From: Macrostomum lignano
Taxonomy: Eukaryota
Length of the DNA stretch: 64,000 nucleotides
Assembly (NCBI GenBank): GCA_002269645.1
Contig: NIVC01001103.1
Coordinates: 1-64,000 of the forward strand
Direction of reading: 5' to 3'
Made by a program: the position numbers and the translations under genes. Below, one piece after another: positions 946-58,805 of this stretch. Below the pieces are notes generated by a model, which saw nothing but the letters and a program-made list of their open reading frames with translations, made no database searches and was not told where the DNA came from. Within the stretch, counting starts at the first letter, position 1. Every line of letters begins with the position of its first letter.

Positions 946-5950
<5,005 letters not shown>

Positions 5951-7135: not shown

Positions 7136-7934
7136 GGGAATGACGGGAAATAGCACACCAATAATCTTGCCTCCCTTATTGCCTTCTGTTGGCTTATATA
7201 TTTCACTGTCCCCCTGTCTCTGCTAGCGTTCATTTTAATATGTAGGAAGGATCCTCAGATTTAAGTAATTTGAAATCATTTTAGTTGACTCTGTGTTCTT
7301 TTTTGCTCCTTGCATTTTAAAAATATCAATTTTTTCATTTAATTGAACTAGTTTTTTGCTATTTGTTTTTTTGTCTTATTTAGGTGTGCGATGCTACTTA
7401 AATCAGTAGTGCGTATTGTCTCGGTAAATTTATTGTACTAAATAAAATATTAGAACTAGATAGATAGAAACTATTAATGCAAATAAAAGCTATAAGTTTA
7501 AAAACAGTCTAATTTGGTTAATAAGATTATTAAAATACATTTAAACTACCTGCAATATAAAAATATGCATATGTATTTGGTGTCTTTTCAAGCTCTCTAA
7601 ACACATTGTAAAGCTGCCCAGATGTGTTTTTATTTCTATCGATTTGTCAGTCTATCTGTGGTGATTTTTAATTTAATTTTGATTTTACTCTTTCTGCTCT
7701 CTGTAATTGTCTTCTGCTTTTGTGTTTTCGGCTGTCGGATAACAATAAATGATTGATTTGTGTTGTACTTTATAAATTCTATCTGTAGCGATTAATAAAA
7801 CTGCAAATTACCTTGGGACTTTGCTGGCTTCGACGCGCGACTTCTGTGCAGTTCTTTGTTTCTTTTTGAAGCTCAACTTTCTGCTCAGAAGTGACCTTTA
7901 TGCAGTTTCCTAATCCCTTATCTAAGCTTAATCA

Positions 7935-9200
7935 TCTACTCTCTCCAATTCTACCCGATTGTTTATCCCTCTGTCCTTCACTCTCCCCAGTTCTACCCGA
8001 TTGTTTATCCCTCTGTCCATCACTCTCCCCAGTTCTACCCGATTGTTTATCCCTCTGTCCCCCACTCTCTCCCCAGTTCTACCCGATTGTTTATCCCTCT
8101 GTCCCCCACTCTCTCCCCAGTTCTACCCGATTGTTTATCCCTCTGTCCCTCACTCTCTCCCCAGTTCTACCTGATTGTTTATCCCTCTGTCCCTCACTCT
8201 CTCCCCAGTACTACCCGATTGTTTATCCCTCTGTCCCTCACTCTCTTCCCAGTTCTTCCCGATTGTTTATCCCTCTGTCCCTCACTCTCTCCCCAGTTCT
8301 TCCCGATTGTTTATCCCTCTGTCCCCCACTCTCTCCCCAGTTCTACCCGATTGTTTATCCCTCTGTCCCCCACTCTCCCCAGTTCTACCCGATTGTTTAT
8401 TCCTCTGTCCCCCACTCTCTCCCCAGTTCTACCCGATTGTTTATCCCTCTGTCCCTCACTCTCCCCAGTTCTACCCGATTGTTTATCCCTCTGTCCCTCA
8501 CTCTCTCCCCAGTTCTACCCGATTGTTTATCCCTCTGTCCCCCACTCTCCCCAGTTCTACCCGATTGTTTATCCCTCTGTCCCCCACTCTCTCCCCAGTT
8601 CTTCCCGATTGTTTATCCCTCTGTCCCCCACTCTCTCCCCAGTTCTACCCGATTGTTTATCCCTCTGTCCCTCACTCTCTCCCCAGTTCTTCCCGATTGT
8701 TTATCCCTCTGTCCCTCACTCTCTCCCCAGTTCTACCCGATTGTTTATCCCTCTGTCCCCCACTCTCTCCCCAGTTCTGCCCGATTGTTTATCCCTCTGT
8801 CCCTCACTCTCTCCCCAGTTCTGCCCGATTGTTTATCCCTCTGTCCCTCACTCTCTCCCCAGTTCTGCCCGATTGTTTATCCCTCTGTCCCTCACTCTCT
8901 CCCCAGTTCTACCCGATTGTTTATCCCTCTGTCCCCCACTCTCCCCAGTTCTACCCGATTGTTTATCCCTCTGTCCCCCACTCTCCCCAGTTCTACCCGA
9001 TTGTTTATCCCTCTGTCCCTCACTCTCTCCCCAGTTCTACCCGATTGTTTATCCCTCTGTCCCTCACTGTGCCCAGTTCTACCCGAGTTCTATCCCGGTT
9101 GTTTATCCCTCTGGCCCCCACTCTCTCCCCAGTTCTACCCGATTGTTTATCCCTCTGTCCCTCACTCTCTCCCCAGTTCTACCCGATTGTTTATCCCTCT
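7935..9200. repeat. 42/44-bp pyrimidine-rich minisatellite upstream of POP5
   Basis: Unit CTCTCCCCAGTTCTACCCGATTGTTTATCCCTCTGTCCCTCACT, period 44 (8101 to 8145); source of the three long low-complexity + ORFs. Confidence 0.93.
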
Positions 9201-9238
9201 TTACTCCTTAATAACACTGAGTTCGCTACGGACTCCAG

Positions 9239-9652
9239 GTGCGCAAGAAGTACCGCTACCTGACCTGCGAGTTGGTGGCCGAGAATCGGCAGGCCGCAGC
9301 TCAGGCTGGCGAAGGCGAGCTGATTGCGGCTGTCCGAGAATCCGTGCTGACGCTGCACGGAGCCCTCGGCCTTGGCCGGGTTGTGAACCGACTCAAACTG
9401 GTGGACTGGAGCCGCGACACCGGCGTCCTGGTGCTCCGAGTGAGCCGCGACACGCATCGCTACCTGGCCTCCGCTCTGCCCTTCGTGAAGTCATTGCACG
9501 GCTCCCGGGTTGCCATAGCAACTCTGCACTGCAGCGGCACAGTCAGATGCGCGGCCAAATTTCTAACCCGATTCTATTCGGCCGATTCGACTGTTCGAAA
9601 GCAGAAAATATTGGCTAGCAGTTTAGCTAAGCTGGGCGCTAAGCCTATCTGA
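9239..9652 (+). CDS. POP5: RNase P/MRP subunit POP5 (no encoded ATG; frame starts GTG directly after a CAG acceptor)
   Basis: VRKKYRYLTCELV...HGALG...TGVLVLRVSR...LASALPFV...TLHCSGTVRCAAKFL matches the POP5 pattern MVRFKxRY...SALPF...TLHVGGTIR (recalled from memory). Acceptor AG at 9237-9238. Confidence 0.88.
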   Translation: MRKKYRYLTCELVAENRQAAAQAGEGELIAAVRESVLTLHGALGLGRVVNRLKLVDWSRDTGVLVLRVSRDTHRYLASALPFVKSLHGSRVAIATLHCSGTVRCAAKFLTRFYSADSTVRKQKILASSLAKLGAKPI

Positions 9653-10087: not shown

Positions 10088-10209
10088 AGAGCACACGCTT
10101 AGTATCTATAATAGCATCGGGATTTTTCTCGCAAAAGTGAGACTTCATAAAATTTTCCTAGATTCAGATAGTGTCCTATTGATTATTTGCTTCAGCGACA
10201 GCAGTCGCC

Positions 10210-11685
10210 ATGGCAACAAGAGCTACTCAACCGGATGATGCGGCGCGGATGACTCTAGCCGAATGCAACGAATTGCTATTGAGCATCGAGCAGCAGCAGC
10301 AGTCGGACTCCAGTGACTCAGCCCTGCGGCTGCTCCGGGCTGCCAGATCGATGGCCGCTCTGTGCGGCGAGTTCCGAAGTCAGCTGGTTGTTGATGACAC
10401 CTTGGCTGAGCGCTTCCTAGCCGCGGTTGTACAAAGCGCAGAACGCTGTCCTGCTCAGCAGCCCGACGCATCCGTGACCGCGTCTGTAGCCATTCAGACG
10501 GTGTACAACGCCTGCGCCTTTGACTCCTTGGACAGTGTTGAAAGATCGTCGGGGAGTCGGCTAGCTGGTCACGTGACTGACTGGCTGAGCAGCCTGTGCC
10601 GGCTTGTGCTGTCTCTGCAGCAGCGAGATCGCGACCGTCCAGCCGCCTGTCTCAGCCTGCTGCTGGTGCTGCTGAGCTCCAGCCGGTCCGGCTCCCAATG
10701 CCTGGCTGCCAATCCGGCTGCGGAGGAACAGGCTGCGGTCTTTGTTCGTCAGGAGCTGCTGACAGTCTGCGGAGTGGAAGAGGATAGCGGCAGCTGCGCA
10801 GGAGACCGGCTGTTGGCTCTGCGCGAGCTTCTTGGCACTGACTGCGGCTCCCGCCTGCTGATGCCGGAGCTGCGCCTGTCCGAAATGCAGCCGGCGCCAG
10901 CTGCTCAGGACTGCTTGGCCCAGCTGCTCCACTTGGCTGTACAGTCCCAGCCGGAGCCGCCTCCCCTGTCCAGAGCCGCCTGGCGCCGCCTGCTTGAGCA
11001 CCTGAGAAGCTACGCCAGCCAGCTGCTGTGCACAGTTCGAGCCGATCCGGTTAGCCTGGAGTCCGGCTCCGCTCTGTTCTTCTGCGCCTGCGATCTGCTG
11101 GGCCGACCGTTGGCCAATTGGCAAGCTGGTCAGACTCATGATGATGATGATGATGATGATGTAGCGTCCAGCCTCCGCCGGGATCTGGGCCTGGCCCGCC
11201 TGGCTTGCCAGCTGTTGCGCTGCGCCGACTTGGCCGGCCGCGCCAACCCTGCCGGTCCGTTCGCAGTCGACCGGCGCCGCCTTTTATCGTCGTCGTCGCA
11301 GTCGGACGCCGATCCGGTCTACGAAGCGGCGCTGTCGCATCCGGGAGCGGCATTGAAAACCGCTCTGGTCCGCTTCCTGGCCAATGCCGCCTACTCCAAT
11401 CCGCCATTTCAGTTGGCAATAGTGAAAGAAGGCGGCCTACCGGAGCTGTTGAACTGCTTAGCTTTAGACGATAAGAATCCCTGTTTGAGGCAGTGGGCCG
11501 CTTTGGCTATAAGAAATCTGTGCCAGGATTGCCCCGAGGCGCGGGACCTGCTGCGCCGGCTGAGACCGCTGGGTGATGGCGCCGACAACCTCAGCTCGGA
11601 CAGTCGGGGACTGCTGGACGAATGCTGCGGCACTCGACAGATTACTGTGCGAAATGGCCGAGTTGTGCCTGTGGATGAGGATTGA
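10210..11685 (+). CDS. ATXN10: Ataxin-10 homolog, intronless, 491 aa
   Basis: C-terminal ataxin-10 domain: LKTALVRFLANAAY...GGLPELLNCLALDDKNPCLRQWAALAIRNL; helical, Leu-rich body; TTCAG acceptor 14 nt before the ATG. Confidence 0.85.
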   Translation: MATRATQPDDAARMTLAECNELLLSIEQQQQSDSSDSALRLLRAARSMAALCGEFRSQLVVDDTLAERFLAAVVQSAERCPAQQPDASVTASVAIQTVYNACAFDSLDSVERSSGSRLAGHVTDWLSSLCRLVLSLQQRDRDRPAACLSLLLVLLSSSRSGSQCLAANPAAEEQAAVFVRQELLTVCGVEEDSGSCAGDRLLALRELLGTDCGSRLLMPELRLSEMQPAPAAQDCLAQLLHLAVQSQPEPPPLSRAAWRRLLEHLRSYASQLLCTVRADPVSLESGSALFFCACDLLGRPLANWQAGQTHDDDDDDDVASSLRRDLGLARLACQLLRCADLAGRANPAGPFAVDRRRLLSSSSQSDADPVYEAALSHPGAALKTALVRFLANAAYSNPPFQLAIVKEGGLPELLNCLALDDKNPCLRQWAALAIRNLCQDCPEARDLLRRLRPLGDGADNLSSDSRGLLDECCGTRQITVRNGRVVPVDED

Positions 11686-11714: not shown

Positions 11715-13045
11715 TGAGGCTGGGGACTGGAGATGAAGCTGGGGACTGAAGATGGAGCTAGGGACTGAGGATGAAGCTAGGGACTAAAGATGGAGCTAGG
11801 GACTGAAGATAAAGCTGGGGACTGAGGATGAAGCTAGGGACTAAAGATGGAGCTAGGGAGTGAAGATGGATCTAGGGACTGAAGATAAAGCTGGGGACTG
11901 AAGATGGAGCTAGGGACTGAGGATGAAGCTAGGGACTAAAGATGGAGCTAGGGACTGAAGATAAAGCTGGGGACTGAGGATGAAGCTAGGGACTAAAGAT
12001 GGAGCTAGGGAGTGAAGATGGATCTAGGGACTGAAGATAAAGCTGGGGACTGAGGATGAAGCTGGGGACTGAGGATGAAGCTAGGGACTGAAGATGGATC
12101 TGGGGACTGAAGATGAAGCTGGGGACTGAGGATGAAGCTAGGGACTAAAGATGAAGCTAGGGAGTGAAGATGGATCTAGGGACTGAAGATAAAGCTGGGG
12201 ACTGAGGATGAAGCTGGGGACTGAGGATGAAGCTAGGGACTGAAGATGGATCTGGGGACTGAAGATGAAGCTGGGGACTGAAGATAAAGCTGGGGACTGA
12301 AGATGGATCTGGGGACTGGAGATGGAGCTGGGGACCGAAGATGGATCTGGGGACTGAAGATGGAGCTAGGGACTGAAGATGGAGCTGGGGACTGAAGATG
12401 GATCTGGGGACCGAAGATGGAGCTGGGGACTGAAGATGGAGATAGGGACTGGGGATGAAGCTAGGGACTAAAGATGGAGCTAGGGACTGAAGATAAAGCT
12501 GGGGACTGAGGATGAAGCTAGGGACTAAAGATGAAGCTAGGGAGTGAAGATGGATCTAGGGACTGAAGATAAAGCTGGGGACTGAGGATGAAGCTAGGGA
12601 CTAAAGATGAAGCTAGGGACTGAAGATGGATCTGGGGACTGAAGATGAAGCTGGGGACTGAAGATAAAGCTGGGAACTGAAGATGGAGCTAGGGACTGAA
12701 GATAAAGCTGGGGACTGAAGATGGATCTGGGGACTGGAGATGGAGCTGGGGACCGAAGATGGATCTGGGGACTGAAGATGGAGCTAGGGACTGAAGATGG
12801 AGCTGGGGACTGAAGATGGATCTGGGGACCGAAGATGGAGCTGGGGACTGAAGATGGAGATAGGGACTGGAGATGGAGATGGGGACTGAAGATGGAGATA
12901 GGGACTGGAGATGGGGATTGGAGATGGAGATGGGGACTGGAGATGGAGATGGGGACTGGAGATGGGGATTGGAGATGGAGATGGGGACTGGAGATGGAGC
13001 TGGGGACTGAGGATGAAGCTAGGGAGTGAAGATGGAGATGGGGAC
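11715..13045. repeat. 19-bp minisatellite (GGGGACTGAAGATGGAGCT)n directly after the ATXN10 stop
   Basis: Period 19 (12361 to 12380); begins about 30 nt after the TGA. Confidence 0.92.
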
Positions 13046-13399
13046 TGGAGCTGCAGACGTCCTCAAACGCTTCTGATTAGCTTCTTGTAGCCAATACTGA
13101 GTCTTATCTGAGAATTGTATTTAAAATTGAGCTTAGTTTAAGTGCTATTGTTGTTAATATGTTTTGTTTCATAAATACAGGTAAATATAAGAATACTTTT
13201 TTTGCAGTTGTTTTGCATTTTTCGTTTAATTTTTTTTACCTCATGCGTCGGTACTAGTAGCTAGTTATGAGTATTTAGATTAACCTGAGCACCAATTCAG
13301 CTAGCAGATTAGCAGCCTTTGATTTTCGTCTAAATTAAATTACAAGTTGGACAATGCTGAGCCCGATACTTAATTAGTGGCAATATACACTTCAGCGCC

Positions 13400-16031
13400 A
13401 TGAGCTACAAGGAGCGCGAGCACTTGAACCGGCTGATTATCAGCCAGCTATACTATGATGGCCACCAGTCCATAGCCGTGAAGCTCAACAGCCTGGTGAA
13501 TGACAAATCCGTGCCCTGCGGCCCGTCCAGCCGCCTGCTGAACCTGGTCCGCACCGGCCTGTCCCTGGAGGAGGAGGAGAAAGAGAAAGCCATGCACGAT
13601 GCCAATGCTGTTGAACCGGGCACCGGTATCGATTTGGAAATCGAGTCCGAGACCGTAGCCAAGTCGCCTGAGGCTGCTCTGTACGAAACCTGTTACGTCA
13701 CTTCGCACAAAGCGCCGTGCCGTTCGGCCGCCTTCAGCCCGAGCGGCCAGCTGGTCTGCACGGGATCCACCGATGCCAGCATTAAAATCTTGGACATTGA
13801 ACGGATGCTGCTGAAAGGCATGGGCGGAGACGACGGCTCCAGCGAGTCGCACCCGGTGATTCGCACTCTGTACGATCACACGGAGGAGGTCACCTGTCTG
13901 GAGTTCCACCCGGATCCGCGGCTCACCCTGCTGGCCTCCGCGTCCAAGGACTACTATGTGAAACTGTTCGACTATTCCAATCCGTCTGTGAAGAAAGCGC
14001 AGAGAAGTCTGAGAGAGGCTTCACCGGTTAGTTTGCCCGCCTGTTGCTGGGGGGTTGTTGCTTTTTGCAAGCAAGCTGCAAGCTTCTTATTGTCAAATAG
14101 CCTCTAACTGTTTGTTTGCAATAAGTTCGAACTTGTAAAGTTTCGAGCTTGCGATAATCCGAGCTTGTGATAATCCGAGCTTGTGATAATCCGAGCATGG
14201 GATAATTCGAGCTTGTGATAATCCGAGCTTGTGATAATCCAAGCTTGTGATATCCGAGCTTGTGATAATTCGAGCTTGTGATAATCCGAGCATGGGATAA
14301 TCCGAGCTTGTGATAATCCGAGCATGGGATAATTCGAGCTTGTGATAATCCAACCTTGTGATAATCCAACCTTGTGATAATCCAACCTTGTGATAATCCA
14401 ACCTTGTGATAATCCAACCTTGTGATAATCCAACCTTGTGATAATCCAACCTTGTGATAATCCGAGCTTGTGATAATCCAACCTGCGATAATCCGAGCTT
14501 GTAAAATAGTATCAAGGTCAAGCTCTAATTAGCAGTTTTAAGGTCCCCTTAATCAATGACAAAGTTTTGTTAATATGAAACAAAAGATCCGTTAGAAATC
14601 CTGAGAAAGGCGTGAAAACAACTTTTCGAACTCGACTTCTGAGATGCTTCTGAAAGCGCTTCATCCCGTGCGGCTTCCATTGGCAGGTTCGAACCTTCTG
14701 CTTTCACCCAAGCGGCAACTACATGATTGTCGGCTGCGACCAGCCAACCCTGCGCGTTTACGACGTGTCCACTGGCCAGTGCTTTGTGAGCTGCAATCCC
14801 AACGATCAGCACACTCGGGCGCTCACCATGCTGCGCTGGGCCGGCTCCGGCCAGTACTACTGCTCAGCGTCCAAGGACGGCTGTCTGAAACTCTGGGACG
14901 GCGTTTCCGGCCGTTGCGTGGCCAATTTTGAACGGGCCCACGATGGATACGAAGTCTGCTCCGCTGTGTTCTCCAGGAATGGTGGGAGATAGCTCACTTT
15001 TGTGTGTTAAACTCCCAGCTTCCCAGATCCTCAGTTGCTGGGCCAGCCTCCCAGATCCTCAGTTGCTGGGCCAGCCTCCCAGATCCTCAGTTGCTGGGCC
15101 AGCCTCCCAGATCCTCAGTTGCTGGGCCAGCCTCCCAGATCCTCAGTTGCTGGGTCAGCCTCCCAGATCCTCAGTTACTGGGCCACCAGCCTCCCAGATC
15201 CTCAGTTGCTGGGCCAGCCTCTCAGATCCTCAGTTGCTGGGCCAGCCTCCCAGATCCTCAGTTGCTGGGCCAGCCTCTCAGATCCTTAGTTGCTGGGCCA
15301 GCCTCCCAGATCCTCAGTTGCTGGGCCAGCCTCCCAGATCCTCAGTTGCTGGGCCAGCCTCCCAGATCCTCAGTTGCTGGGCCAGCCTCCCAGATACTCA
15401 GTTGCTGGGCCAGCCTCCCAGATCCTCAGTTGCTGGGCCAGCCTCCCAGAGTGTCAGTTGCTAGGCCAGCCTCCCAGATCCCCAGTTGCTGGGCCAGCCT
15501 CCCAGATCCTCAGTTGCTGGGCCAGCCTCCCAGATCCTCAGTTGCTGGGCCAGCCTCCCAGATCCCCAGTTGCTGGGCCAGCCTCCCAGATCCCCAGTTG
15601 CTGGGCCAGCCTCCCAGATCCTCAGTTGCTGGGCCACCACCAGCCAAAGCAGAGTATTAAAACTCAGTTCATCCCGCTCCCACGCAGGCAAGTACATCCT
15701 CAGCTCCGGCAAGGACTCACAGGTGAAGCTGTGGGAGCTGAGCACCGGCCGGCCCCTCATCACCTACACGGGAGCCGGGGCCAGTGGCCGGCAGAGCCAT
15801 CGAACCAATGCCGTGTTCAACCACACCGAGGACTTCGTGATGTTCCCGGACGAGGCCACCAAGTCGCTCTGCTGCTGGGATTCTCGGAGCGCCGATCGCC
15901 AGAGACTGCTGGCCCTGTCGCACAACGGAGTGGTCCGGTTCATGACTCACTCCACCACCATGCCCGCCTTTATCAGCTGCTCGGACGATCATAGGGCTCG
16001 ATTCTGGTACAAGAAGGCCCTGACCGAGTGA
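13400..16031 (+). CDS. CSTF1: Cleavage stimulation factor 50 kDa subunit (WD40), 3 exons
   Basis: Exons 13400-14026, 14687-14981, 15688-16031 (GT-AG, phases compatible). Motifs: [56 protein letters not shown]. Confidence 0.95.
14150..14492. repeat. 16-bp minisatellite (ATAATCCGAGCTTGTG)n in CSTF1 intron 1
   Basis: Direct tandem units with CCGAG/CCAAC variants. Confidence 0.9.
15012..15632. repeat. 28-bp minisatellite (CTCCCAGATCCTCAGTTGCTGGGCCAGC)n in CSTF1 intron 2
   Basis: About 22 near-identical units filling almost the whole intron. Confidence 0.93.
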
Positions 16032-22472: not shown

Positions 22473-25400
22473 CTAGCTTCTCTGTCCGACGCCGCCTCCA
22501 CCATTGTCGTCGTTGATCGCATCCCTGGAGTCGTTCTCGCCGGCGTCTTCATCAGCAGGGGGAGCGGCGGCGGGCCCAGCCGGGCAGGCCAGCAGCTGGC
22601 AGGGGTGCAGAGCGGCCAGGCCAGCCAGGGCGGCGCCCACAGCATAGGCGGGCCGGTGATCGTCCAGCCTGAGAGACAGGCGCAGCAGGGGATACTGCAG
22701 CCAGGCAAATCCGGCCCCGGACAGGCTCACTAATCCGTACAGCCGGCCGAACTGTCCGGCCGGGAATGCGTCCAACAGTAGGCAGGGGAGCAGGGCGAAT
22801 AGCAGAGAACGGTAGGCAACTAGTAAGGCGAATTGCGGAACCAGAGGCAGCGGCGGCGAGGCCAGGCCGAGGCAGCAGACGGCGCAGCCGGTGCCGCACT
22901 GGGCAAGCAGCGGCCAGGCCAGGCTCCGGGGCGCCGGCCGCGGTCCGAGACGGCGAGCCGCCCGCAGGCCGAGGGCGACGGCGAATGCGGCTGGCAAGCC
23001 GGCGAACATGAGCGCGCCGAGCAGGCTGAGCTGCCTGACATTGGGGGCGGGGAAAGGAAATAATAATAATTACTAAATCAACTCTCATTTAACAGCATTC
23101 ATCTGTCACTCCTCAGTTAACAGCATTCATCTGTCACTCCTCATTTAACAGCATTCATCTGTCACTCCTCATTTAACAGCATTCATCTGTCACTCCTCAG
23201 TTAACAGCATTCATCTTGATCTATCACTCCCCAGTTAACAGTATTCATCTTGATCTATCACTCCTCAGTAAACAGCATTCATCTATCACTCCTCAGTAAA
23301 CAGCATTCATCTATCACTCCTCAGTTAACAGCATTCATCTGTCACTCCTCAGTTAACAGCATTCATCTGTCACTCCTCAGTTAACAGCATTCATCTGTCA
23401 CTCCTCAGTTAACAGCATTCATCTGTCACTCCTCAGTTAACAGCATTCATCTGTCACTCCTCAGTTAACAGCATTCATCTATCACTCCTCAGTTAACAGC
23501 ATTCATCTGTCACTCCTCAGTTAACAGCATTCATCTATCACTCCTCAGTTAACAGCATTCATCTGTCACTCCTCAGTTAACAGTATTAATCTTGATCTAT
23601 CACTCCTCAGTTAACAGCATTAATCTGTCACTCCTCAGTTAACAGCATTCATCTTGATCTATCACTCCTCAGTTAACAGCATTCATCTTGATCTATCACT
23701 CCTCAGTTAACAGTATTCATCTTGATCTATCACTCCTCAGTTAACAGCATTCATCTTGATCTATCACTCCTCAGTTAACAGCATTCATCTTGATCTATCA
23801 CTCCTCAGTTAACAGTATTCATCTTGATCTATCACTCCTCAGTTAACAGTATTCATCTTGATCTATCACTCCTCAGTTAACAGCATTAATCTTGATCTAT
23901 CACTCCTCAGTTAACAGTATTCATCTTGATCTATCACTCCTCAGTTAACAGCATTAATCTTGATCTATCACTCCTCAGTTAACAGCATTAATCTGTCACT
24001 CCTCAGTTAACAGTATTCATCTTGATCTATCACTCCTCAGTTAACAGCATTAATCTTGATCTATCACTCCTCAGTTAACAGCATTAATCTTGATCTATCA
24101 CTCCTCAGTTAACAGTATTCATCTTGATCTATCACTCCTCAGTTAACAGCATTAATCTTGATCTATCACTCCTCAGTTAACAGTATTCATCTTGATCTAT
24201 CACTCCTCAGTTAACAGCATTAATCTTGATCTATCACTCCTCAGTTAACAGCATTCATCTTGATCTATCACTCCTCAGTTAACAGCATTCATCTTGATCT
24301 ATCACTCCTCAGTTAACAGCATTCATCTTGATCTATCACTCCTCAGTTAACAGTATTCATCTTGATCTATCACTCCTCAGTTAACAGCATTCATCTTGAT
24401 CTATCACTCCTCAGTTAACAGTATTCATCTTGATCTATCACTCCTCAGTTAACAGTATTCATCTTGATCTATCACTCCTCAGTTAACAGTATTCATCTTG
24501 ATCTATCACTCCTCAGTTAACAGCATTAATCTTGATCTATCACTCCTCAGTTAACAGTATTCATCTTGATCTATCACTCCTCAGTTAACAGAATTAATCT
24601 TGATCTATCACTCCTCAGTTAACAGCATTAATCTGTCACTCCTCAGTTAACAGTATTCATCTTGATCTATCACTCCTCAGTTAACAGCATTAATCTTGAT
24701 CTATCACTCCTCAGTTAACAGTATTCATCTTGATCTATCACTCCTCAGTTAACAGCATTCATCTTGATCTATCACTCCTCAGTTAACAGCATTAATCTTG
24801 ATCTATCACTCCTCAGTTAACAGTATTCATCTTGATCTATCACTCCCCATTTAACAGTATTCATCTTGATCTATCACTCCTCAGTTAACAGCATTAATCT
24901 TGATCTATCACTCCTCAGTTAACAGTATTCATCTTGATCTATCACTCCTCAGTTAACAGCATTCATCTTGATCTATCACTCCTCAGTTAACAGCATTAAT
25001 CTTGATCTATCACTCCTCAGTTAACAGTATTCATCTTGATCTATCACTCCCCATTTAACAGTATTCATCTTGATCTATCACTCCTCAGTTAACAGCATTA
25101 ATCTTGATCTATCACTCCTCAGTTAACAGTATTCATCTTGATCTATCACTCCTCAGTTAACAGCATTAATCTTGATCTATCACTCCTCAGTTAACAGCAT
25201 TAATCTTGATCTATCACTCCTCAGTTAACAGTATTCATCTTGATCTATCACTCCTCAGTTAACAGCATTAATCTTGATCTATCACTCCTCAGTTAACAGT
25301 ATTCATCTTGATCTATCACTCCTCAGTTAACAGCATTCATCTTGATCTATCACTCCTCAGTTAACAGCATTCATCTTGATCTATCACTCCTCAGTTAACA

Positions 25401-27686
25401 GCATTCATCTTGATCTATCACTCCTCAGTTAACAGCATTCATCTTGATTTATCACTCCTCAGTTAACAGTATTCATCTTGATCTATCACTCCTCAGTTAA
25501 CAGTATTCATCTTGATCTATCACTCCTCAGTTAACAGTATTCATCTTGATCTATCACTCCTCAGTTAACAGCATTCATCTTGATCTATCACTCCTCAGTT
25601 AACAGTATTCATCTTGATCTATCACTCCTCAGTTAACAGTATTCATCTTGATCTATCACTCCTCAGTTAACAGCATTCATCTTGATCTATCACTCCTCAG
25701 TTAACAGCATTCATCTTGATCTATCACTCCTCAGTTAACAGTATTCATCTTGATCTATCACTCCTCAGTTAACAGTATTCATCTTGATCTATCACTCCTC
25801 AGTTAACAGCATTCATCTTGATCTATCACTCCCCAGTTAACAGTATTCATCTTGATCTATCACTCCTCAGTTAACAGCATTCATCTTGATCTATCACTCC
25901 TCAGTTAACAGCATTCATCTTGATCTATCACTCCCCAGTTAACAGTATTCATCTTGATCTATCACTCCTCAGTTAACAGTATTCATCTTGATCTATCACT
26001 CCTCAGTTAACAGTATTCATCTTGATCTATCACTCCTCAGTTAACAGTATTCATCTTGATCTATCACTCCTCAGTTAACAGCATTCATCTTGATCTATCA
26101 CTCCTCAGTTAACAGTATTCATCTTGATCTATCACTCCTCAGTTAACAGTATTCATCTTGATCTATCACTCCTCAGTTAACAGCATTCATCTTGATCTAT
26201 CACTCCCCAGTTAACAGTATTCATCTTGATCTATCACTCCTCAGTTAACAGTATTCATCTTGATCTATCACTCCTCAGTTAACAGTATTCATCTTGATCT
26301 ATCACTCCCTAGTTAACAGTATTCATCTTGATCTATCACTCCTCAGTTAACAGTATTCATCTTGATCTATCACTCCCCAGTTAACAGTATTCATCTTGAT
26401 CTATCACTCCCCAGTTAACAGCATTCATCTTGATCTATCACTCCTCAGTTAACAGTATTCATCTTGATCTATCACTCCCCAGTTAACAGCATTCATCTTG
26501 ATCTATCACTCCTCAGTTAACAGCATTCATCTTGATCTATCACTCCTCAGTTAACAGCATTCATCTTGATCTATCACTCCTCAGTTAACAGTATTCATCT
26601 TGATCTATCACTCCTCAGTTAACAGTATTCATCTTGATCTATCACTCCTCAGTTAACAGCAATGGGAAAATTCCCTCAGCAATTTTATCCTTTCTTCCTT
26701 CTTAGCAAGCAGTTTTCTTAGAAAGTTTCCCAGGCTGACAACCTTCATTCTCAAACGCACCTGTAAGCTTCTCCAGGCACCCCGTTAGCAGCCAACTGAG
26801 CCAGCAGCGGAGCGTGCGACAGGCACAGCAAAAACACCAACAGGGAGGCCATTGCCCAGGCCAGATGGCTGATGTACAGCCGACTGCAAAGGGTCATAGC
26901 CAGAGTCGGTTCACTGGAGAAGCCAGCTGAAGCGGCAGTAGAGTTGCAGCCACCAGCCGCTGTCCGGGGCGGCCTGGGATCGAGCCTGGCTAACAGGCCA
27001 GTCAGACAGAGGCTTATTATTGCAACAGCAGCGCCCAGACTGACAAAGGCGGCGGCTCGATAGCGGCTGGACTGTGCCGGACCGCCTGCGGCCAGGCACA
27101 GATTCAGCACCAGAGTTGGCACAAGGGCGCTGGAATCGAACGCGCCAGACACTGAGCACACTAATAAGCTGGAGCCGCGGCGCATCAAGCCGCCGATGGA
27201 TAGACAGGTTACCATGGAGACGGCGCTGGAGACACCCCAGAGGATGGCGCCGGCGTAGAGAGCGGCGTTGCCGGCTGGCGACGGAGCGGCCAGGCCGAAG
27301 CAGAGGCAGCAGGCCAGGGCGGCCGCGGCGCCAGCCAGGCGGCAGGGCAGGCGGCCCAGCCGGTCCAGCAGGAGGCCGGCAACAAAGCAGGCCACCATGT
27401 GGACGCCAACACCGATCGAGTGCACCAGAGCGAATCTGGCCTCGCCTTCGGCCGGGCAAGCCGCCTCTGCTTCAACCGTCTGCACAGCCGCCACAACCGC
27501 ATCGCTGACTGTGGCGTTGCAGCCAAAAAAGCCTTCGCGTTGTAGAATAGCCTGCCAGCTGGGCAAATTGACAAAGAAGCCGCTATAGATGAGAGTCTCG
27601 CCGACTGCTAAACTGGCGCATAGGATGGCAGCGCCAGGCTTCAGCTGGTACTGCTGCTGCTGCTGTTGATGATGCCGTTGTCTCAC
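22473..27686 (-). CDS. SLC43-family (LAT3/LAT4/SLC43A3-like) MFS transporter, 2 exons, about 495 aa, no encoded ATG
   Basis: Exons 27686-26761 and 23034-22473 (phase 2 join). Motifs: ETLIYSGFFVNLPSW..IL.REGFF, GLLLDRLG, SGAFDSSALV, FPAGQFGRLYGL; many hydrophobic segments. Frame starts GTG directly after TTGCAG. Confidence 0.8.
23085..26660. repeat. 34-bp minisatellite (TTAACAGCATTCATCTTGATCTATCACTCCTCAG)n with a 28-bp variant, SLC43 intron
   Basis: About 3.6 kb array occupying about 95% of the intron; 28-bp units dominate the low-coordinate end. Confidence 0.95.
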
Positions 27687-29019
27687 CTGCAATCAGATAC
27701 GTGTTATAAAGATTTACAATAAAAACGATAGTTACCCTACTTATAGTAGCTTTTTGCAGTCAGGTAGGGTTTTACGACAAAAACGCTGTTTACCCTACTT
27801 ACAGTGGTTTTCGACAATCTGCTAAGGTTTTACACTAAAATACGCTATTTACCCTACTTATAGTAGATTTTCAACAATTCAAAAAGCGCTACTTATTTCA
27901 CAAATTATATAAAATTTAACACTAAAACGTTTCCTTTTCCTATAACATGTTTCTCTTGGCAAATCTACGGGAAAAGTTATCCTTACATGCAATAACTAAT
28001 ACAATAGCAAAAAACGCTATATAACCTACTTGCAGTAGATTTCGTCAACTAAATAAACTAAGCCATTTTAACACTGTTATTTTCTTATCCAAATTTGAAA
28101 ATTATCTAAGTTAGGCCTCGGATTTCTGTGCGCCAATTCGACTAACAGGTTTTGGGGCGAGGTAGGAATAACAGACAGGTGCCAGTTTAGAGACTGTTAT
28201 CGAGGAGACCGCCTCAACCTATGTAATAAGGCTATGCTCTCAAATGCAGTCAAATCATAGTAGATTTCTCACTGGCATGACGAACAGATCTCTAGAGAAA
28301 TTTCAGACTTAGCCTCGCCCTAAAAATGTCTGCTATTAAAAAATAAGCTTGCATCACAAAGCAAATAAAAAAGACTTGACAAATCTGCTGGCAAAACTTA
28401 ATCAAACAATTTGTACGTGTCAATACAATATGCGCTTATAATTAGATAAAAAGAAACCAGCCAAGATGCAAGACATTTGCAAATAGAAATCAACAAAGTA
28501 GTTAAATAGATTAATATAAAAATTATTATAAACAAGAATAGCAGACGGCACAGCTATTAGTCCGCGTTGCAGCGGCAAATGTGGATGAATTTCATTGGAA
28601 AAAATCACAGTTAAAAATGGCTCAATTAAACTTAATAAACACCATTAGATATGACTCTTTCATATCTTTTGAACTACTCAAAATTTAAAATATATACTAT
28701 AATAAAATGTTACAGAAAAAACTGTAGAAGGAACTACAGATCAACAGATTTGTTGTACATTAAATCCCATAATTTAATTCAACTTGCATGCCTAAAACAG
28801 TACAGGCTATAATAGAAGCAAACAGTAAAACTTTACTAAACTCGTATTGGCCTCTGCAATGCTAAGAAGGGAATGTAAGTTTAAAGCAGCGACACCTGTC
28901 TAATATGGAGAAAAATCTGTTTTATCAATAGCGAAAGCATGCAACCATAGCTAGTTGAGTAGGGAATGTCTAACTAGAAATACTGACAGTAAGTACTTGC
29001 ATTAGGCTTATATGGACTG

Positions 29020-29900
29020 GCGCCACAATCACACAGAACTCATCCTGTGAACTAGCGCCACAATCATACAGGTCTCATTCTGTGAACTGGCGCATTAATC
29101 ACACAGGCCTCATTCTGTGAACTGGCGCATTAATCACACAGGTCTCATTCTGTGAACTAGCGCCACAATCACACAGGTCTCATTATGTGAACTAGCGCCA
29201 CAATCACACAGGTCTCATTCTGTGAACTGGCGCATTAATCACACAGGCCTCATTCTGTGAACTGGCGCATTAATCACACAGGTCTCATTCTGTGAACTAG
29301 CGCCACAATCACACAGGCCTCATTCTGTGAACTAGCGCCACAATCACACAGGCCTCATTCTGTGAACTAGCGCCACAATCACACAGGTCTCATTCTGTGA
29401 ACTGGCGCATTAATCACACAGGCCTCATTCTGTGAACTGGCGCATTAATCACACAGGCCTCATTCTGTGAACTGGCGCATTAATCACACAGGTCTCATTC
29501 TGTGAACTAGCGCCACAATCACACAGGTCTCATTATGTGAACTAGCGCCACAATCACACAGGTCTCATTCTGTGAACTGGCGCATTAATCACACAGGCCT
29601 CATCCTGTGAATTAGCGCAATAATCACACAGGTCTCATTCTGTGAACTAGCGCCACAATCACACAGGTCTCATTCTGTGAACTGGCGCATTTATCACACA
29701 GGCCTCATCCTGTGAATTAGTGCAATAATCACACAGGTCTCATTCTGTGAACTAGCGCCACAATCACACAGGTCTCATTATGTGAACTAGCGCCACAATC
29801 ACACAGGTCTTATTATGTGAACTAGCGCCACAATCACACAGGTCTCATTCTGTGAACTGGCGCATTAATCACACAGGTCTCATACTGTGAAGTGGCGCTA
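29020..29900. repeat. 35-bp minisatellite (GCGCCACAATCACACAGGTCTCATTCTGTGAACTA)n
   Basis: Period 35 (29161 to 29196); two interleaved variants. Confidence 0.93.
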
Positions 29901-30419
29901 TAACCAATTATCTTTGAATATATGAAGCCTCAATATAAGCTAGAACTGAAAAATCTAATCGATAACAGGTGAAAATTGAAGACTGACACACCGATTGAGC
30001 ATTTAAACAATGTCAGAATAATTATAGTAATACACGAATAATAATAAAATGCAGATGACATTAAGAACAGTGCGTCTATGCAAAGCCGGAACACAAAGCG
30101 ACCAACAGGAAGCCAGTATATGCAGTGCAAATATGCAAAAGGATTTTAAGTTAGTTGAAAAATTAAATGGTTGATTATCTAGTTGAAAAGAAGAAATTCA
30201 CAGCCTAATCTCAACAATAATCATAACTTATGCTTATCTATTTCTACCAATAGTACATAAAATATTATTAATTATATGATAATCATTACAACACAGCCTG
30301 GAATAGTTGGCACAATTTCTGATACACCTCGCACACTAGTACTGTATATTCACGTATTCACTCTCAGTAAGGCACTGCTGGTTTAGAGTGAGCCTGTCAC
30401 ATCCAGAGACAGTGTCAAT

Positions 30420-31445
30420 CAAGAATTAATCTAAAGTCAATCTAGAGCCCATCAAGAGTCAATCTAGAGCCAATCGAGAGCCAATATATAGTCAATCTAG
30501 AGCCAATATTTAGTCAATCTAGAGCCAATATAGAGCCAATCTAGAGTCAATCTAGAGCCAATATAGAGTCCATCTAGAGTCTATCTAAAGTCAATCTAAA
30601 GTCAATCTAAAGTCAATCTAGAGCCAATATATAGTCAATCTAGAGTCAATATAGAGCCAATATAGAGCCAATCTAGAGCCAATCTAGAGTCAATCTAGAG
30701 CCAATCTAGAGCCAATCTAGAGCCAATATATAGTCAATCTAGAGCCAATATAGAGCCAATCTAGAGTCAATATAGAGCCAATCTAGAGCCAATCTAGAGT
30801 CAATCTAGAGCCAATCTAGAGCCAATCGAGAGCCAATATATAGTCAATCTAGAGCCAATATAGAGCCAATCTAGAGTCAATCTAGAGCCAATATAGAGTC
30901 CATCTAGAGTCTATCTAAAGTCAATCTAAAGTCAATCTAAAGTCAATCTAGAGCCAATATTTAGTCAATCTAGAGTCAATATAGAGCCAATATAGAGCCA
31001 ATCTAGAGCCAATCTAGAGCCAATCTAGAGCCAATCTAGAGTCAATCTAGAGCCAATCTAGAGCCAATCTAGAGTCAATATATAGCCAATATAGAGCCAA
31101 TCTAGAGCCAATCTAGAGTCAATATATAGCCAATATAGAGCCAATCTAGAGTCAATATATAGCCAATATAGAGCCAATCTAGAGTCAATATATAGCCAAT
31201 ATATAGCCAATATAGAGCCAATCTAGAGCCAATATAGAGCCAATCTAGAGCCAATCTAGAGTCAATATAGAGCCAATCTAGAGTCAATATAGAGACAATA
31301 TAGAGTCAATCTAAAGTCAATCTAAAGCCACTATATAGCCAATCTAAAGTCAATCTAGAGCCAATCTAGAGTCAATCTAGAGCCAATCTAGAGTCAATCT
31401 AGAGTCAATCTAGAGTCAATCTAGAGTCAATCTAGAGTCAATCTA
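30420..31445. repeat. 11-bp minisatellite (AATCTAGAGCC/AATCTAGAGTC)n
   Basis: About 1 kb of tandem 11-mers with internal block duplications. Confidence 0.92.
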
Positions 31446-31602
31446 CAGGAGAGATATTAATAATAGAGTCAATCTATTATTAATATAAAGAACTAAAAGT
31501 TGGAGCATAAAAATGAATTGCTACAGCGAGAGTTGCATTAAAAGAAGAAAAACGCAAGATATTGGAAATCTACACTATTAATAACTGACATGCCTCCAAG
31601 CC

Positions 31603-42909: not shown

Positions 42910-44034
42910 TCTACTCTGGCGTGGCCCGACTGGCCAGCAGAACCAGTGGAGGTGGGTGGGTTAATTGCCAGGATGTACTTTAATAAGGCCAAAAAAACTG
43001 CTTGTCTATTTACAGTGCAGTCTATCAACTATTTGGTCAAAACTCAAACTGATGGCCAATTGTGATAATGAATTTAATTTAGGGATAGAACATGATCCTA
43101 ATCCCAAAATACAAGGATACTAGAAAAAAATGGGATCATTAATCCTGCCTGACCACAAAATTTTATACTATATCTAACTGTTAATTTATTCACAAAAAAA
43201 TCTATATTCAAACTCTTTTTAAAGAAATTTGCTTAGGATTTGCTTGTAGCAATTTGTTAACATTTAAGCATTTTACTTATGACTAAAAGTATTATTTAAT
43301 TGATCATATGTATAAGCCAAGTAATTAATAGATAAAAAGCTTTATTTAAAAGATAAAAATAATAAGCCTATGGATACATCTAATTTAAAAAATTTGGTTA
43401 TTGCTGCTATGTGCTTTGTTAAAACTATAAAAAGCAATTAAAAATTATTTAAATATTTTTTGACAAAAAACAAGATTAAAATCTTTTGACTATTTTTATT
43501 TACATCAATGTTTTTAATGCAAACATGTCTAGTCAAAAACAAATATAATTTGTGCATATGTATATAATAATATAACAAAAATGCTAGAAAGTAATAATTT
43601 TAAATAGAAAGTATAGCAGTCATTTTTTATTATTGCTAAAACAAAAAGTTTTTTTAAAGTTCAAATATAAAAGTACTTATTTAATTCTTTTATTTGTACC
43701 TGGCAATTTTTTCAATGTAATCTATAGTTTAAATAAAAGAAGCTTTTAATATATTTTTACCTTTTTATATTAAAAATATAACATAAAAATTACTTCTATA
43801 TCATATGTTGCATTGGCGCTATATATAATTTAATGTAAATTTTTGGTAAAGTACATTTGTAATGATAAAGATAATGATTGATTGCATTGTTCATGAGCAG
43901 CATGCAAAAGTATAAGTACTTATGGAACACCCCTTGTATGATTTTGCCTCTATGCCTCTATGCTACAATCTTTGCGCTATCACACCACTGTCATGATGTA
44001 CTGTCAGCAGGCTGCAGGAGGCATTTTTGTAAGA

Positions 44035-58002: not shown

Positions 58003-58805
58003 CAACAACAACAACAAATTACGCCCCAGGGTCGATGTTGGGCGTCACAGGTCGCGCCTCAGAGCACGGGATCGGAGAAAGGCCGGTCCACCGGCCTGGT
58101 CGGGGGCGCCAGCATCGGCCAGCAGGCAGTCCGGATACCGCCGAGTGCGCGCCTGCCCCCGCCGGAAGGGCGCCGGGAGCGCAAGCAGCAGCGTCTCCTG
58201 CGCCGGCTCGGGGCAGTACGCCTCAGCGCGGATGAGGTGGCCTGCCAGCTGGAGCCGCCGGCGGCGGAGCAGATCGCTGGGGCGGGCCAGGCGAGCTCGG
58301 GCGTACAGCGCCACGTTGGTGACATGCTCGCCGCCGCCGATCTTGAAGGCAGCGCGCAGCAGGCCGGCGTGCGCTGCGTCGACCTGTCGCTCGAGCGTCT
58401 CCGTCAGCGTCCATGTTTCAGCGTTGTAGAGCAGGACGGTCTCGATCACCGCCTGGAACAACGCCGAGCGCTGGCGGTCTGGCAGGGCCGCAGAGTGCAG
58501 GACGGTCCTCATGGAGTTGAAGGCCGCCCAAGCGAGTCCACGGCGACGCCTCAGGTCGTCGAAGGCGTCAGGTACCAAACCACCGAGGTATACGAACTGC
58601 TGAACACGCGGCAGCAGCGTCGCCTGCCCATCGGCGCCTCGGCAGTAGATGTCGGCTTGGATGTTGGTGGGCATGGTGAGCACGACGGTCTTTTGCGTGT
58701 TGATCACCAGGCCGACGCTCGCAGCAACGCCAACCAGACGGTCCAGCTGACGTTGGGGGCCCTCGACGGTTGAGGACAGCAGGGCGAGATCATCGGCGAG
58801 AACAC
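58003..58805 (-). mobile_element. 5'-truncated RTE-clade non-LTR retrotransposon (3' part of the RT ORF)
   Basis: ADDLALL...FVYLG...AWAAF......VLLYNAETWTLT...LLR....LAGHLIR, uninterrupted to the stop at 58045; (TTG)n tail; 12-bp TSD CAGCACATAAAA at 57991-58002 and 58806-58817. Confidence 0.9.

What the first reader, a model, noticed from the sequence alone, without database searches (positions are those of the whole stretch)
27560..27720. Second ATG-less gene: SLC43-like transporter also starts GTG directly after an acceptor
Seen on the - strand: ...TCTGATTGCAG|GTG AGA CAA CGG CAT. The frame from 27686 gives about 495 aa with TM1 about 20 residues in, close to full SLC43 length, and its first in-frame ATG lies past TM1. 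Two ATG|GT strings exist upstream (plus-strand ACCAT at 28641 and 28944), but both have poor donor consensus (GTGTTT, GTTGCA). Inference: the same SL-AUG mechanism as POP5. Two cases among ten genes would suggest it is common here.
Basis: partly seen in the sequence, partly recalled or inferred. Interest (0 to 1): 0.7.

Follow-up and report, generated by a model that had tools for sequence, protein, structure and literature searches.

The report
Flatworm transporter gene borrowing spliced-leader start codon
A Macrostomum lignano membrane-transporter gene has no start codon of its own ahead of its first membrane helix and almost certainly takes its ATG from the trans-spliced leader RNA, a trick already documented in flatworms, so this is a sound but ordinary case.

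Summary
On the minus strand TTGCAG|GTGAGACAACGGCAT sits at 27692-27672. From 27686 a two-exon ORF of 495 aa runs to the stop at 22473. An in-frame TGA lies three codons upstream of 27686. The first in-frame ATG is codon 97, inside TM2.

The window is Macrostomum lignano (NIVC01001103.1:1-64000). Its spliced leader ends in ATG. The protein is SLC43-like, with ENBT1/SLC43A3 as the best PDB match.

Support for a leader-supplied start codon:
- Homologues' initiator Met aligns 16 residues inside this N-terminus.
- The three genomic copies show 12 synonymous against 3 non-synonymous changes.
- All three GenBank proteins are 'partial'.
- A 35%-identical paralogue has the same TTGCAG, phase-0, ATG-less layout, and its annotated 5' end sits at that acceptor. 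POP5 in this window does too.
- No credible upstream ATG exon exists.

Two caveats apply. The annotated 5' ends fall inside the CAG run and fit a junction at 27660|27659, also in frame, rather than 27687|27686. One copy has the acceptor mutated to CTG. No reads were available.

Initiation from the leader AUG is known in flatworms (Cheng 2006) and has been noted for Macrostomum. This is a new member of a known kind, of low to moderate interest.

The parts
27687..27692 (-). TTGCAG, candidate SL trans-splice acceptor (AG at 27688-27687). It matches the published M. lignano SL-acceptor motif [T/C]TNCAG and is in phase 0 with the ORF.
   Evidence: Sequence; motif from PMC8629364; frame. Conserved in L002 (the window) and L003, but CTG in L001.
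27693..27695 (-). In-frame TGA that closes the reading frame three codons upstream of the exon start.
   Evidence: the ORF list starts at TTG 27692, just after this stop.
26761..27686 (-). Exon 1 (926 nt) if spliced at 27687|27686. It encodes VRQRHHQQQQQQYQLKPG, then TM1 to about TM7, and ends at donor TACAG|GTGCGT.
   Evidence: matches PAA72218.1 from residue 11.
27651..27668 (-). CAA(CAG)5 run encoding polyQ. Each CAG is an AG in phase 0 with the ORF. The annotated CDS start is 27656, and the junction that best fits the three GenBank models is 27660|27659 (SL|CAGCAGCAGTAC).
   Evidence: The copy L003 carries an in-frame 6-nt deletion here.
27570..27632 (-). TM1 (about AAILCASLAVGETLIYSGFFV), holding the family-conserved E and G residues.
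   Evidence: Hydropathy; alignment A1; ENBT1 alignment.
27396..27398 (-). First in-frame ATG (codon 97), inside TM2. A protein started here would lack TM1 and part of TM2.
27351..27377 (-). GLLLDRLGR, the MFS motif-A-like loop between TM2 and TM3. G, D and G are invariant in alignment A1.
23035..26760 (-). Single intron (GT..AG, 3726 nt), almost wholly a 34-bp minisatellite (23101-26661, about 108 copies). It is 1063 nt in L001 and 961 nt in L003.
22473..23034 (-). Exon 2 (562 nt including stop TAG 22475-22473).
27713..27878 (-). 58-bp tandem repeat (2.8 copies) ending 27 nt upstream of the acceptor, inside the presumed outron.
28272..28280 (-). ATGCCA|GTGAGA, the only upstream phase-0 ATG-to-donor candidate with a consensus GT[AG]AG donor. 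Rejected because the ATG is GTG in copy L003.

Best explanation
The gene is a two-exon SLC43-like major-facilitator transporter of Macrostomum lignano (BOX15_Mlig032414g1). Its genomic sequence holds no initiator ATG ahead of TM1.

Proposed mechanism: the pre-mRNA is trans-spliced to the 35-nt spliced leader (...TTATTGCATG) at an AG in phase 0 with the ORF. The leader's terminal AUG then becomes codon 1.
- Splicing at TTGCAG| (27687|27686) gives M-VRQRHHQQQQQQYQLKPG-TM1, 496 aa.
- Splicing inside the CAG run (best fit 27660|27659) gives M-QQQYQLKPG-TM1, 487 aa.
Either product is a complete 12-TM-type transporter.

Shown here: the sequence anatomy, the frame, the completeness of the N-terminus relative to homologues, purifying selection, and the same layout in a paralogue and in POP5.

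Inferred, not shown: that SL is actually added to this mRNA, which AG is used, and that ribosomes start at the SL AUG.
For: 1. Organism and leader. The exon-1 protein is 100% identical to M. lignano PAA58371, PAA72218 and PAA56626. The window equals NIVC01001103.1:1-64000. The M. lignano SL is CGGTCTCTTACTGCGAAGACTCAATTTATTGCATG, and 30-39% of genes are trans-spliced.

2. Acceptor. TTGCAG matches the top SL-acceptor motif [T/C]TNCAG and is in phase 0. Only about 0.08 such in-frame motifs are expected by chance in that stretch.

3. A start codon is needed and missing. There is a TGA three codons upstream, and the first ATG is codon 97, in TM2.

4. The N-terminus is complete. In a search of 1.84 billion proteins, many full-length homologues align their residues 7-20 to query residues 11-20. 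In alignment A1 their initiator Met aligns to K17 of the SL-started protein. ENBT1/SLC43A3 residue 18 aligns to residue 30.

5. The gene is functional. L002 against L003 shows 12 synonymous and 3 non-synonymous codon changes plus an in-frame 6-nt CAG indel. The CDS is about 1% divergent against 4.5% in the 700 nt upstream.

6. All three GenBank models are 5'-partial. The annotation pipeline trims the SL, cuts transcripts at SL sites and then calls ORFs, which is what an SL-AUG gene would look like.

7. Paralogue. Mlig002832g1 and Mlig015998g1 (35% identical) have cccattgcag|TGCTGGGAG: the same hexamer, phase 0, and first Met after TM1. Their annotated proteins start CWEPK or WEPK, that is, at the acceptor or 3 nt after it.

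8. POP5 in the same window. ACTCCAG|GTGCGCAAGAAG lies at 9238|9239. The annotated proteins start VRKKYRYL or RKKYRYL, and the Rpp14 Pfam model begins at residue 6.

9. No upstream ATG exon. Only one phase-0 ATG...GT[AG]AG candidate exists in 3.9 kb, against 2.1 +/- 1.8 expected by chance, and its ATG is absent in L003. The only 100-nt upstream window reaching 50% G+C (at about 29402) lies inside the 35-bp minisatellite, whereas the coding exons are about 65-70% G+C.

10. Eight of the first nine AGs between 27687 and TM1 are in frame with the SL AUG.

11. Precedent. The SL AUG serves as initiator in Schistosoma mansoni (Cheng et al. 2006, as cited). The Macrostomum SL ATG is called a translation start codon in PMC10468722.
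Against: No SL-containing read, cDNA or peptide for this gene could be examined.

The GenBank CDS starts are 30 nt (L001, L002) and 21 nt (L003) downstream of TTGCAG|, not at it. If SL reads had peaked at 27686, the pipeline would be expected to start the model there, as it does for POP5 and the paralogue.

The CAG-run site has no pyrimidine tract. In L003 the corresponding position follows CAA, not AG, so that model needs cross-mapping of reads from other copies to be explained.

Copy L001 has TTGCTG at the acceptor, so the site is not strictly conserved.

The repeat-adjusted distance to the upstream FERM gene is about 1.85 kb. That exceeds the 1-kb operon threshold used for this species, so operon membership gives no support.

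CAG|GTGAGA also resembles a donor site.
Confidence: 0.72

Rival explanations
1. A cis-spliced 5' exon with its own ATG lies somewhere in the 3.9 kb between the FERM gene and 27686. It joins the TTGCAG acceptor in phase 0, and the current annotation simply misses it.
For: CAG acceptors serve both cis- and trans-splicing. The annotated 5' ends of this gene are incomplete or odd. One candidate, ATGCCA|GTGAGA at 28278-28272, has a consensus donor and a purine at -3.
Against: That candidate's ATG is GTG in L003, a copy that is under purifying selection. The number of consensus candidates (1) is below chance (2.1 +/- 1.8), and upstream G+C stays below 0.5 outside a minisatellite. Homologues need no further N-terminal residues. 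None of the three GenBank models, nor the paralogue's, carries an upstream exon.
Confidence: 0.08
2. The mRNA is not trans-spliced in a productive way. Translation starts at a near-cognate codon in the genome (TTG 27692, GTG 27686, or CTG in copy L001), or the SL AUG is not the codon used.
For: TTG and GTG lie in frame at the 5' edge of the ORF. The L001 change CAG>CTG creates an in-frame CTG. Non-AUG initiation is documented in SL organisms.
Against: Near-cognate initiation is inefficient and rarely the only start. This organism has a ready AUG donor that is used in the same way by POP5 and by the paralogue. An unspliced leader would carry many upstream ATGs from the repeat-rich outron.
Confidence: 0.07
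3. Translation starts at the first genomic ATG (codon 97), or the locus is a decaying or non-functional copy. The ATG-less N-terminus would then have no functional meaning.
For: Pfam sees only sub-threshold MFS matches. The protein is compositionally extreme, rich in Ala, Leu and Gly. One copy has lost the acceptor AG. The annotated 5' ends suggest low coverage.
Against: Codons 1-96 carry 3 differences between L003 and the other two copies (2 non-synonymous, 1 synonymous). Over the whole CDS the ratio is 12 synonymous to 3 non-synonymous, and all three ORFs are intact. TM1 with the family-conserved E31 and G37 lies upstream of Met97. A Met97 product would lack TM1 and half of TM2 of an MFS fold. 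The indel in the CAG run is in frame.
Confidence: 0.06
4. The transporter exons are 3' exons of the upstream FERM gene, either as a fusion or read-through transcript.
For: Same strand, and synteny is conserved in all three copies.
Against: The FERM ORF ends in a stop at about 31603 and is annotated as a separate 630-633 aa protein in every copy. The in-frame TGA at 27695-27693 does not bear on this, but no FERM exon with a phase-0 donor is annotated to join here. SLC43 homologues start at this N-terminus.
Confidence: 0.02

Closest known systems
[quoted passage not shown]
   Same: The SL ends in AUG. The acceptor lies in phase with a conserved ORF that has no AUG of its own before essential N-terminal sequence. 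The genomic frame is closed just upstream.
   Different: The species is a free-living macrostomid, not a trematode. Here the case rests on sequence and annotation only, with no cDNA or translation assay. A run of CAG codons also offers several alternative in-frame acceptors.
POP5 (Rpp14/Pop5 family) gene in the same window, 9239-9652 (+)
   Same: A [C/T]TNCAG acceptor is followed directly by GTG in phase 0. There is no ATG. The GenBank protein is 5'-partial and starts at the acceptor (VRKKYRYL) or 3 nt after it (RKKYRYL).
   Different: For POP5 the annotated 5' end coincides with the acceptor, and MVR.. recreates the usual family N-terminus. For the transporter the annotated ends lie 21-30 nt further in, within the CAG run.
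M. lignano paralogue BOX15_Mlig002832g1 / Mlig015998g1 (SLC43-like, 35% identical)
   Same: Identical TTGCAG hexamer, phase 0, a 9-to-14-residue tail before TM1, first Met in TM2, a 5'-partial annotation, and tandem repeats filling the upstream spacer.
   Different: There is no polyQ run, and the annotated start is at the acceptor itself. The protein has a longer central loop (570-576 aa).
SLC43 family (ENBT1/SLC43A3, LAT4/SLC43A2)
   Same: Best solved-structure relatives are 9l38_A (E=1.3e-11) and 9jbs_A (E=0.013). It has MFS-type hydrophobic segments, the G-x-x-x-D-R-x-G loop after TM2 and a long central loop.
   Different: Identity to animal homologues is only about 22-31%. Pfam MFS_1 is below threshold. 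The substrate is unknown.
slORFs: ORFs created by start codons within spliced leaders (slORFfinder, PMC9851317)
   Same: The SL supplies the initiation codon to the recipient mRNA.
   Different: Those were defined from ribosome footprints in nematodes, Oikopleura and trypanosomes, mostly with near-cognate codons. No such data exist here.

Membership tests
SL-AUG-initiated flatworm mRNAs (Cheng et al. 2006) | The organism's spliced leader ends in AUG | tested here: met
   Organism identified as M. lignano. The published SL is ...TTATTGCATG. PMC10468722 calls the ATG a start codon.
SL-AUG-initiated flatworm mRNAs (Cheng et al. 2006) | The mRNA is trans-spliced to SL at the proposed acceptor | not testable with these tools
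   No read or cDNA data were accessible. Indirect evidence only: the motif matches, but the annotated 5' ends lie in the CAG run. The SL sequence is absent from the window, as expected.
SL-AUG-initiated flatworm mRNAs (Cheng et al. 2006) | The SL AUG is in frame with the conserved ORF | tested here: met
   Phase 0 at 27687|27686 and at every CAG, TACCAG and CTGAAG AG down to 27639.
SL-AUG-initiated flatworm mRNAs (Cheng et al. 2006) | No genomic AUG upstream of essential conserved N-terminal sequence, and the frame is closed upstream | tested here: met
   TGA at 27695-27693; first ATG at codon 97 in TM2; homologues' Met aligns at residue 17.
SL-AUG-initiated flatworm mRNAs (Cheng et al. 2006) | No alternative cis-spliced ATG-bearing 5' exon | tested here: inconclusive
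   The scan found one consensus candidate, not conserved in L003. Non-consensus donors cannot be excluded without RNA data.
SL-AUG-initiated flatworm mRNAs (Cheng et al. 2006) | Translation actually initiates at the SL AUG | not testable with these tools
   This needs ribosome profiling, N-terminal proteomics or a reporter assay.
SLC43 transporters (MFS) | Significant sequence similarity to SLC43 members, better than to other MFS families | tested here: met
   The only significant PDB hits are ENBT1/SLC43A3 (1.3e-11) and LAT4/SLC43A2 (0.013). 116 homologues were found in the 1.84-billion-protein library. No reciprocal search was done.
SLC43 transporters (MFS) | 12-TM MFS architecture with a motif-A-like loop between TM2 and TM3 | tested here: inconclusive
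   Hydropathy shows about 11-12 hydrophobic segments, and GLLLDRLGR is conserved. Pfam MFS_1 scores 20.6 bits, below the 33.4 cut-off. No structure was predicted.
SLC43 transporters (MFS) | Transport of nucleobases or neutral amino acids | not testable with these tools
   This needs an uptake assay.

The most novel reading that the evidence does not exclude
The polyQ-coding CAG run just inside the exon may act as a ladder of alternative SL acceptors, all in frame. The gene would then keep a leader-supplied start codon even when the primary TTGCAG acceptor is lost, as in copy L001, and would make N-terminal length isoforms. The GenBank 5' ends (QQQY and QQY) would be the trace of such a site at 27660|27659. 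More broadly, SL-AUG genes may be selected to keep every nearby AG in frame; here 8 of 9 are.
Probability: 0.2. Interest if true: 0.45.

Novelty: new member of a known kind. Interest (0 to 1): 0.27.

Why it matters
It matters mainly for annotation. In M. lignano the published pipeline trims the whole SL, ATG included. Genes that depend on the SL AUG therefore end up in GenBank as 'partial' proteins without a start. This window holds two such genes, POP5 and this transporter, and the transporter's paralogue is a third. Adding the SL ATG back at phase-0 SL sites would complete many gene models.

Biologically, it extends a mechanism shown in schistosomes to an early-branching free-living flatworm and to a membrane transporter. 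That fits the conserved terminal AUG of flatworm leaders. It opens no new question.

Tried and rejected
1. Rfam scan of the window: no hit. SL sequence search in the window: no hit. The SL gene is elsewhere in the genome.

2. Looked for transcript-derived proteins carrying the SL Met (MVRQRHH.. or MQQQY..). The 90% cluster holds only the three GenBank partial proteins, so there is no independent transcript evidence.

3. Searched papers and supplements for Mlig032414, Mlig011329 and Mlig034476: nothing found.

4. First assumed a fixed off-by-one rule, with annotated transcripts starting at exon base +1, based on four genes. Cluster members then showed that copies start at +0 or +3, so I replaced the rule with '+0 to +3'.

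5. Took the FERM gene's 5' end as a clean SL-acceptor example. Only copy L001 has CAG there; the window and L003 have CTG. It is therefore a weak calibrator.

6. Considered CAG|GTGAGA as a donor with a 27-nt intron ending in the CAG run. Rejected: the intron is too short, and because 27 is a multiple of 3 the upstream frame still meets the TGA.

7. Considered the out-of-frame acceptor GTGAG| (27682). It gives a 33-codon dead-end ORF and has the disfavoured G at -3.

8. Operon membership with FERM: the repeat-adjusted spacer of about 1.85 kb is above the published 1-kb threshold, so this is uninformative.
Full report
**What is there**

On the minus strand the sequence reads ...gtatctgattgcag|GTGAGACAACGGCATCATCAACAGCAGCAGCAGCAGTACCAGCTGAAGCCTGGC.... 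The AG is at 27688-27687, so the exon would start at 27686.

From 27686 the frame is open for 926 nt to a donor TACAG|GTGCGT at 26761|26760. It resumes after AATGTCAG| at 23034 and ends at TAG 22475-22473. The product is 495 aa.

The single intron (23035-26760) is almost entirely a 34-bp minisatellite of about 108 copies.

Three codons upstream of 27686 there is an in-frame TGA (27695-27693). The ORF lister accordingly starts the frame at TTG 27692.

The first in-frame ATG is codon 97 (27398-27396).

**Whose genome, and which gene**

The exon-1 translation is 100% identical to three GenBank proteins of Macrostomum lignano: PAA72218.1 (BOX15_Mlig032414g1), PAA58371.1 (Mlig011329g1) and PAA56626.1 (Mlig034476g4). 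All three are labelled 'partial'.

Their contigs give three paralogous loci, L001 to L003, with the same gene order: FERM, transporter, EF-hand, then CSTF1-like WD40. L002 is the window itself, NIVC01001103.1:1-64000.

Pfam gives only sub-threshold MFS matches. The only significant solved-structure relatives are ENBT1/SLC43A3 (E=1.3e-11) and LAT4/SLC43A2 (E=0.013). An exhaustive HMMER search finds 116 relatives. 'SLC43-like' is therefore right.

**Why a start codon is missing**

- In alignment A1, full-length homologues begin with Met at the column of K17 of the conceptual protein M+VRQRHH... The conserved TM1 residues (E31, G37) follow.
- ENBT1 residue 18 aligns to residue 30.
- Many library homologues align their residues 7-20 to query residues 11-20.

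Exon 1 therefore already encodes the whole family N-terminus plus a 16-residue tail. Met97, by contrast, lies in TM2 just before the invariant G-x-x-x-D-R-x-G loop. A Met97 product would lack TM1.

The gene is not decaying.
- L002 against L003 shows 12 synonymous and 3 non-synonymous codon differences.
- The CAG-run indel is in frame.
- The CDS is about 1% divergent, against about 4.5% plus indels in the 700 nt upstream.

**Why the spliced leader is the likely source**

The M. lignano SL is CGGTCTCTTACTGCGAAGACTCAATTTATTGCATG. Between 30% and 39% of genes receive it, and the top motif at SL acceptors is [T/C]TNCAG (PMC8629364, PMC5730564).

TTGCAG fits that motif and is in phase 0. From the motif's frequency in the window, only 0.08 in-frame copies are expected in the 22 codons available.

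The annotation pipeline trims the SL, ATG included, cuts transcripts at SL-read peaks and then calls ORFs. A gene that relies on the SL AUG would thus come out as a 5'-partial protein, which is the case for all three copies.

Two independent parallels support this.

1. POP5 in this same window has ACTCCAG|GTGCGCAAGAAG at 9238|9239. The Rpp14/Pop5 Pfam model begins at residue 6. The GenBank proteins start VRKKYRYL (the window's contig) or RKKYRYL (another copy).

2. A 35%-identical, hence old, SLC43-like paralogue (Mlig002832g1 / Mlig015998g1) has cccattgcag|TGCTGGGAGCC. This is the same hexamer in phase 0, with the first Met in TM2. Its annotated proteins start CWEPK or WEPK.

In both cases the annotated 5' end sits at the acceptor or 3 nt after it. 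That is what an SL-read-defined boundary would give.

Use of the SL AUG as initiator is established for Schistosoma mansoni (Cheng et al. 2006, as cited). There the SL AUG is in frame in 28% of trans-spliced mRNAs, and more than 40 cDNAs need it. The Macrostomum SL ATG has been called a translation start codon (PMC10468722).

**Rivals**

An upstream cis-spliced ATG exon is the main rival. I scanned 27687-31602 for every ATG-initiated open stretch ending in a phase-0 GT.
- There are 45 in all, but only one has the species' GT[AG]AG donor: ATGCCA|GTGAGA at 28278-28272. Block shuffles give 2.1 +/- 1.8.
- In L003 that ATG is GTG.
- Upstream G+C stays below 0.5 except within a minisatellite, whereas the coding exons are about 65-70% G+C.

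Fusion with FERM exons has no support. The FERM ORF stops at about 31603 and is a separate model in all copies.

Near-cognate initiation (TTG, GTG) cannot be excluded. It is less economical, given that the organism has a ready AUG donor.

**What does not fit neatly**

1. The GenBank CDSs of this gene do not begin at 27686. They begin inside the CAG run: CAGCAGCAG|CAGCAGTAC (QQY...) in L001 and L002, and CATCATCAA|CAGCAGCAGTAC (QQQY...) in L003.

POP5 and the paralogue show that copies of one gene are annotated from the acceptor +0 or +3. Read that way, QQQY and QQY match a single mature 5' junction, SL|CAGCAGCAGTAC. In the window that is AG 27661-27660 with the exon starting at 27659.

This site is also in frame and would give M-QQQYQLKPG.... 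It has no pyrimidine tract. In L003 it is preceded by CAA, so the L003 model would have to come from reads of the other copies.

Possibly both sites are used and the pipeline kept the downstream one. Possibly the CAG-run site belongs to L001.

2. L001 has TTGCTG in place of TTGCAG. With the tree ((L001,L002),L003), CAG is ancestral and L001 lost it. In L001 the next good acceptors would be the in-frame CAGs.

Eight of the first nine AGs between 27687 and TM1 are in frame with the SL AUG. The exception, GTGAG|, has the disfavoured G at -3. Counting the CAG run as one event, 4 of 5 in frame has P of about 0.045, which is suggestive only.

**Verdict**

The interpretation, an SL-supplied AUG, is the best explanation, at about 0.72 when both candidate acceptors are counted together.

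The mechanism is known in flatworms and has been anticipated for Macrostomum. This is a new member of a known kind. Its main use is in correcting 'partial' gene models.

Noticed in passing
window 9221-9652 (+): POP5 (Rpp14/Pop5, Pfam E=1.9e-23) has no ATG. The acceptor ACTCCAG|GTGCGCAAG lies at 9238|9239 in phase 0. GenBank copies start VRKKYRYL or RKKYRYL, so the SL ATG would recreate MVRKKYRYL.
   Followed up: partly
window 42933-42945 (-); L001 915-925; L003 1894-1904: The annotated 5' end of the FERM gene follows ttctgCAGg in L001 but ttctgCTGg in the window and in L003. This is the same A/T difference in a GC[A/T]GG context as at the transporter acceptor, where L001 is the copy with CTG. 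Both changes map to the L001 lineage. They could be real gain or loss of acceptors, or an assembly artefact.
   Followed up: partly
window 13388-13402 (+): The CSTF1-like WD40 gene has ACTTCAG|CGCCATGAGC. Its own ATG lies 5 nt after the SL acceptor, so the SL AUG would sit 8 nt upstream of the real ATG (A to A) and out of frame with it. In FERM the SL AUG opens an 8-codon ORF ending in TAG just before the real ATG. How ribosomes bypass the SL AUG in such genes is not addressed here.
   Followed up: no
window 23101-26661: A 34-bp minisatellite of about 108 copies (93% matches) fills the transporter's only intron. Intron length is 3726 nt here, against 1063 nt in L001 and 961 nt in L003.
   Followed up: partly
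window 27713-27878; L004 5700-5960: Tandem repeats run almost up to the SL acceptor in both SLC43-like paralogues. Here it is a 58-bp unit ending 27 nt upstream of the acceptor. In L004 it is a unit of about 21 bp (cagtagaatctgcagatcccgg) ending about 40 nt upstream. Other minisatellites lie in the spacer at 29016-29898 (35 bp) and 30428-31445 (11 bp).
   Followed up: no
window 27639-27688 (-): Eight of the nine AG dinucleotides between the TTGCAG acceptor and TM1 are in frame with an SL-supplied ATG. The only out-of-frame one is GTGAG|.
   Followed up: yes
window 946-4964 (+), 10183-11682 (+), 59981-60463 (+): Other genes seen in passing: a cation-efflux (ZnT/SLC30-like) gene with a His-rich loop, an ataxin-10 homologue on a 500-codon open frame, and a PLAC8-family gene (Pfam).
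   Followed up: partly
window 58048-58863 (-): A 272-codon G+C-rich open frame whose motifs look to me like a reverse-transcriptase fragment (..LADDLALL..). Pfam gave no hit at E<=0.001, so it remains unidentified.
   Followed up: partly
window 7870-9200 (+) and 12000-13080 (-), 14900-15700 (+), 54800-55570: Long G+C-rich minisatellite arrays give spurious ORFs hundreds of codons long in several frames. They lie in introns or spacers next to POP5, CSTF1 and other genes and could mislead ORF-based gene calls.
   Followed up: no
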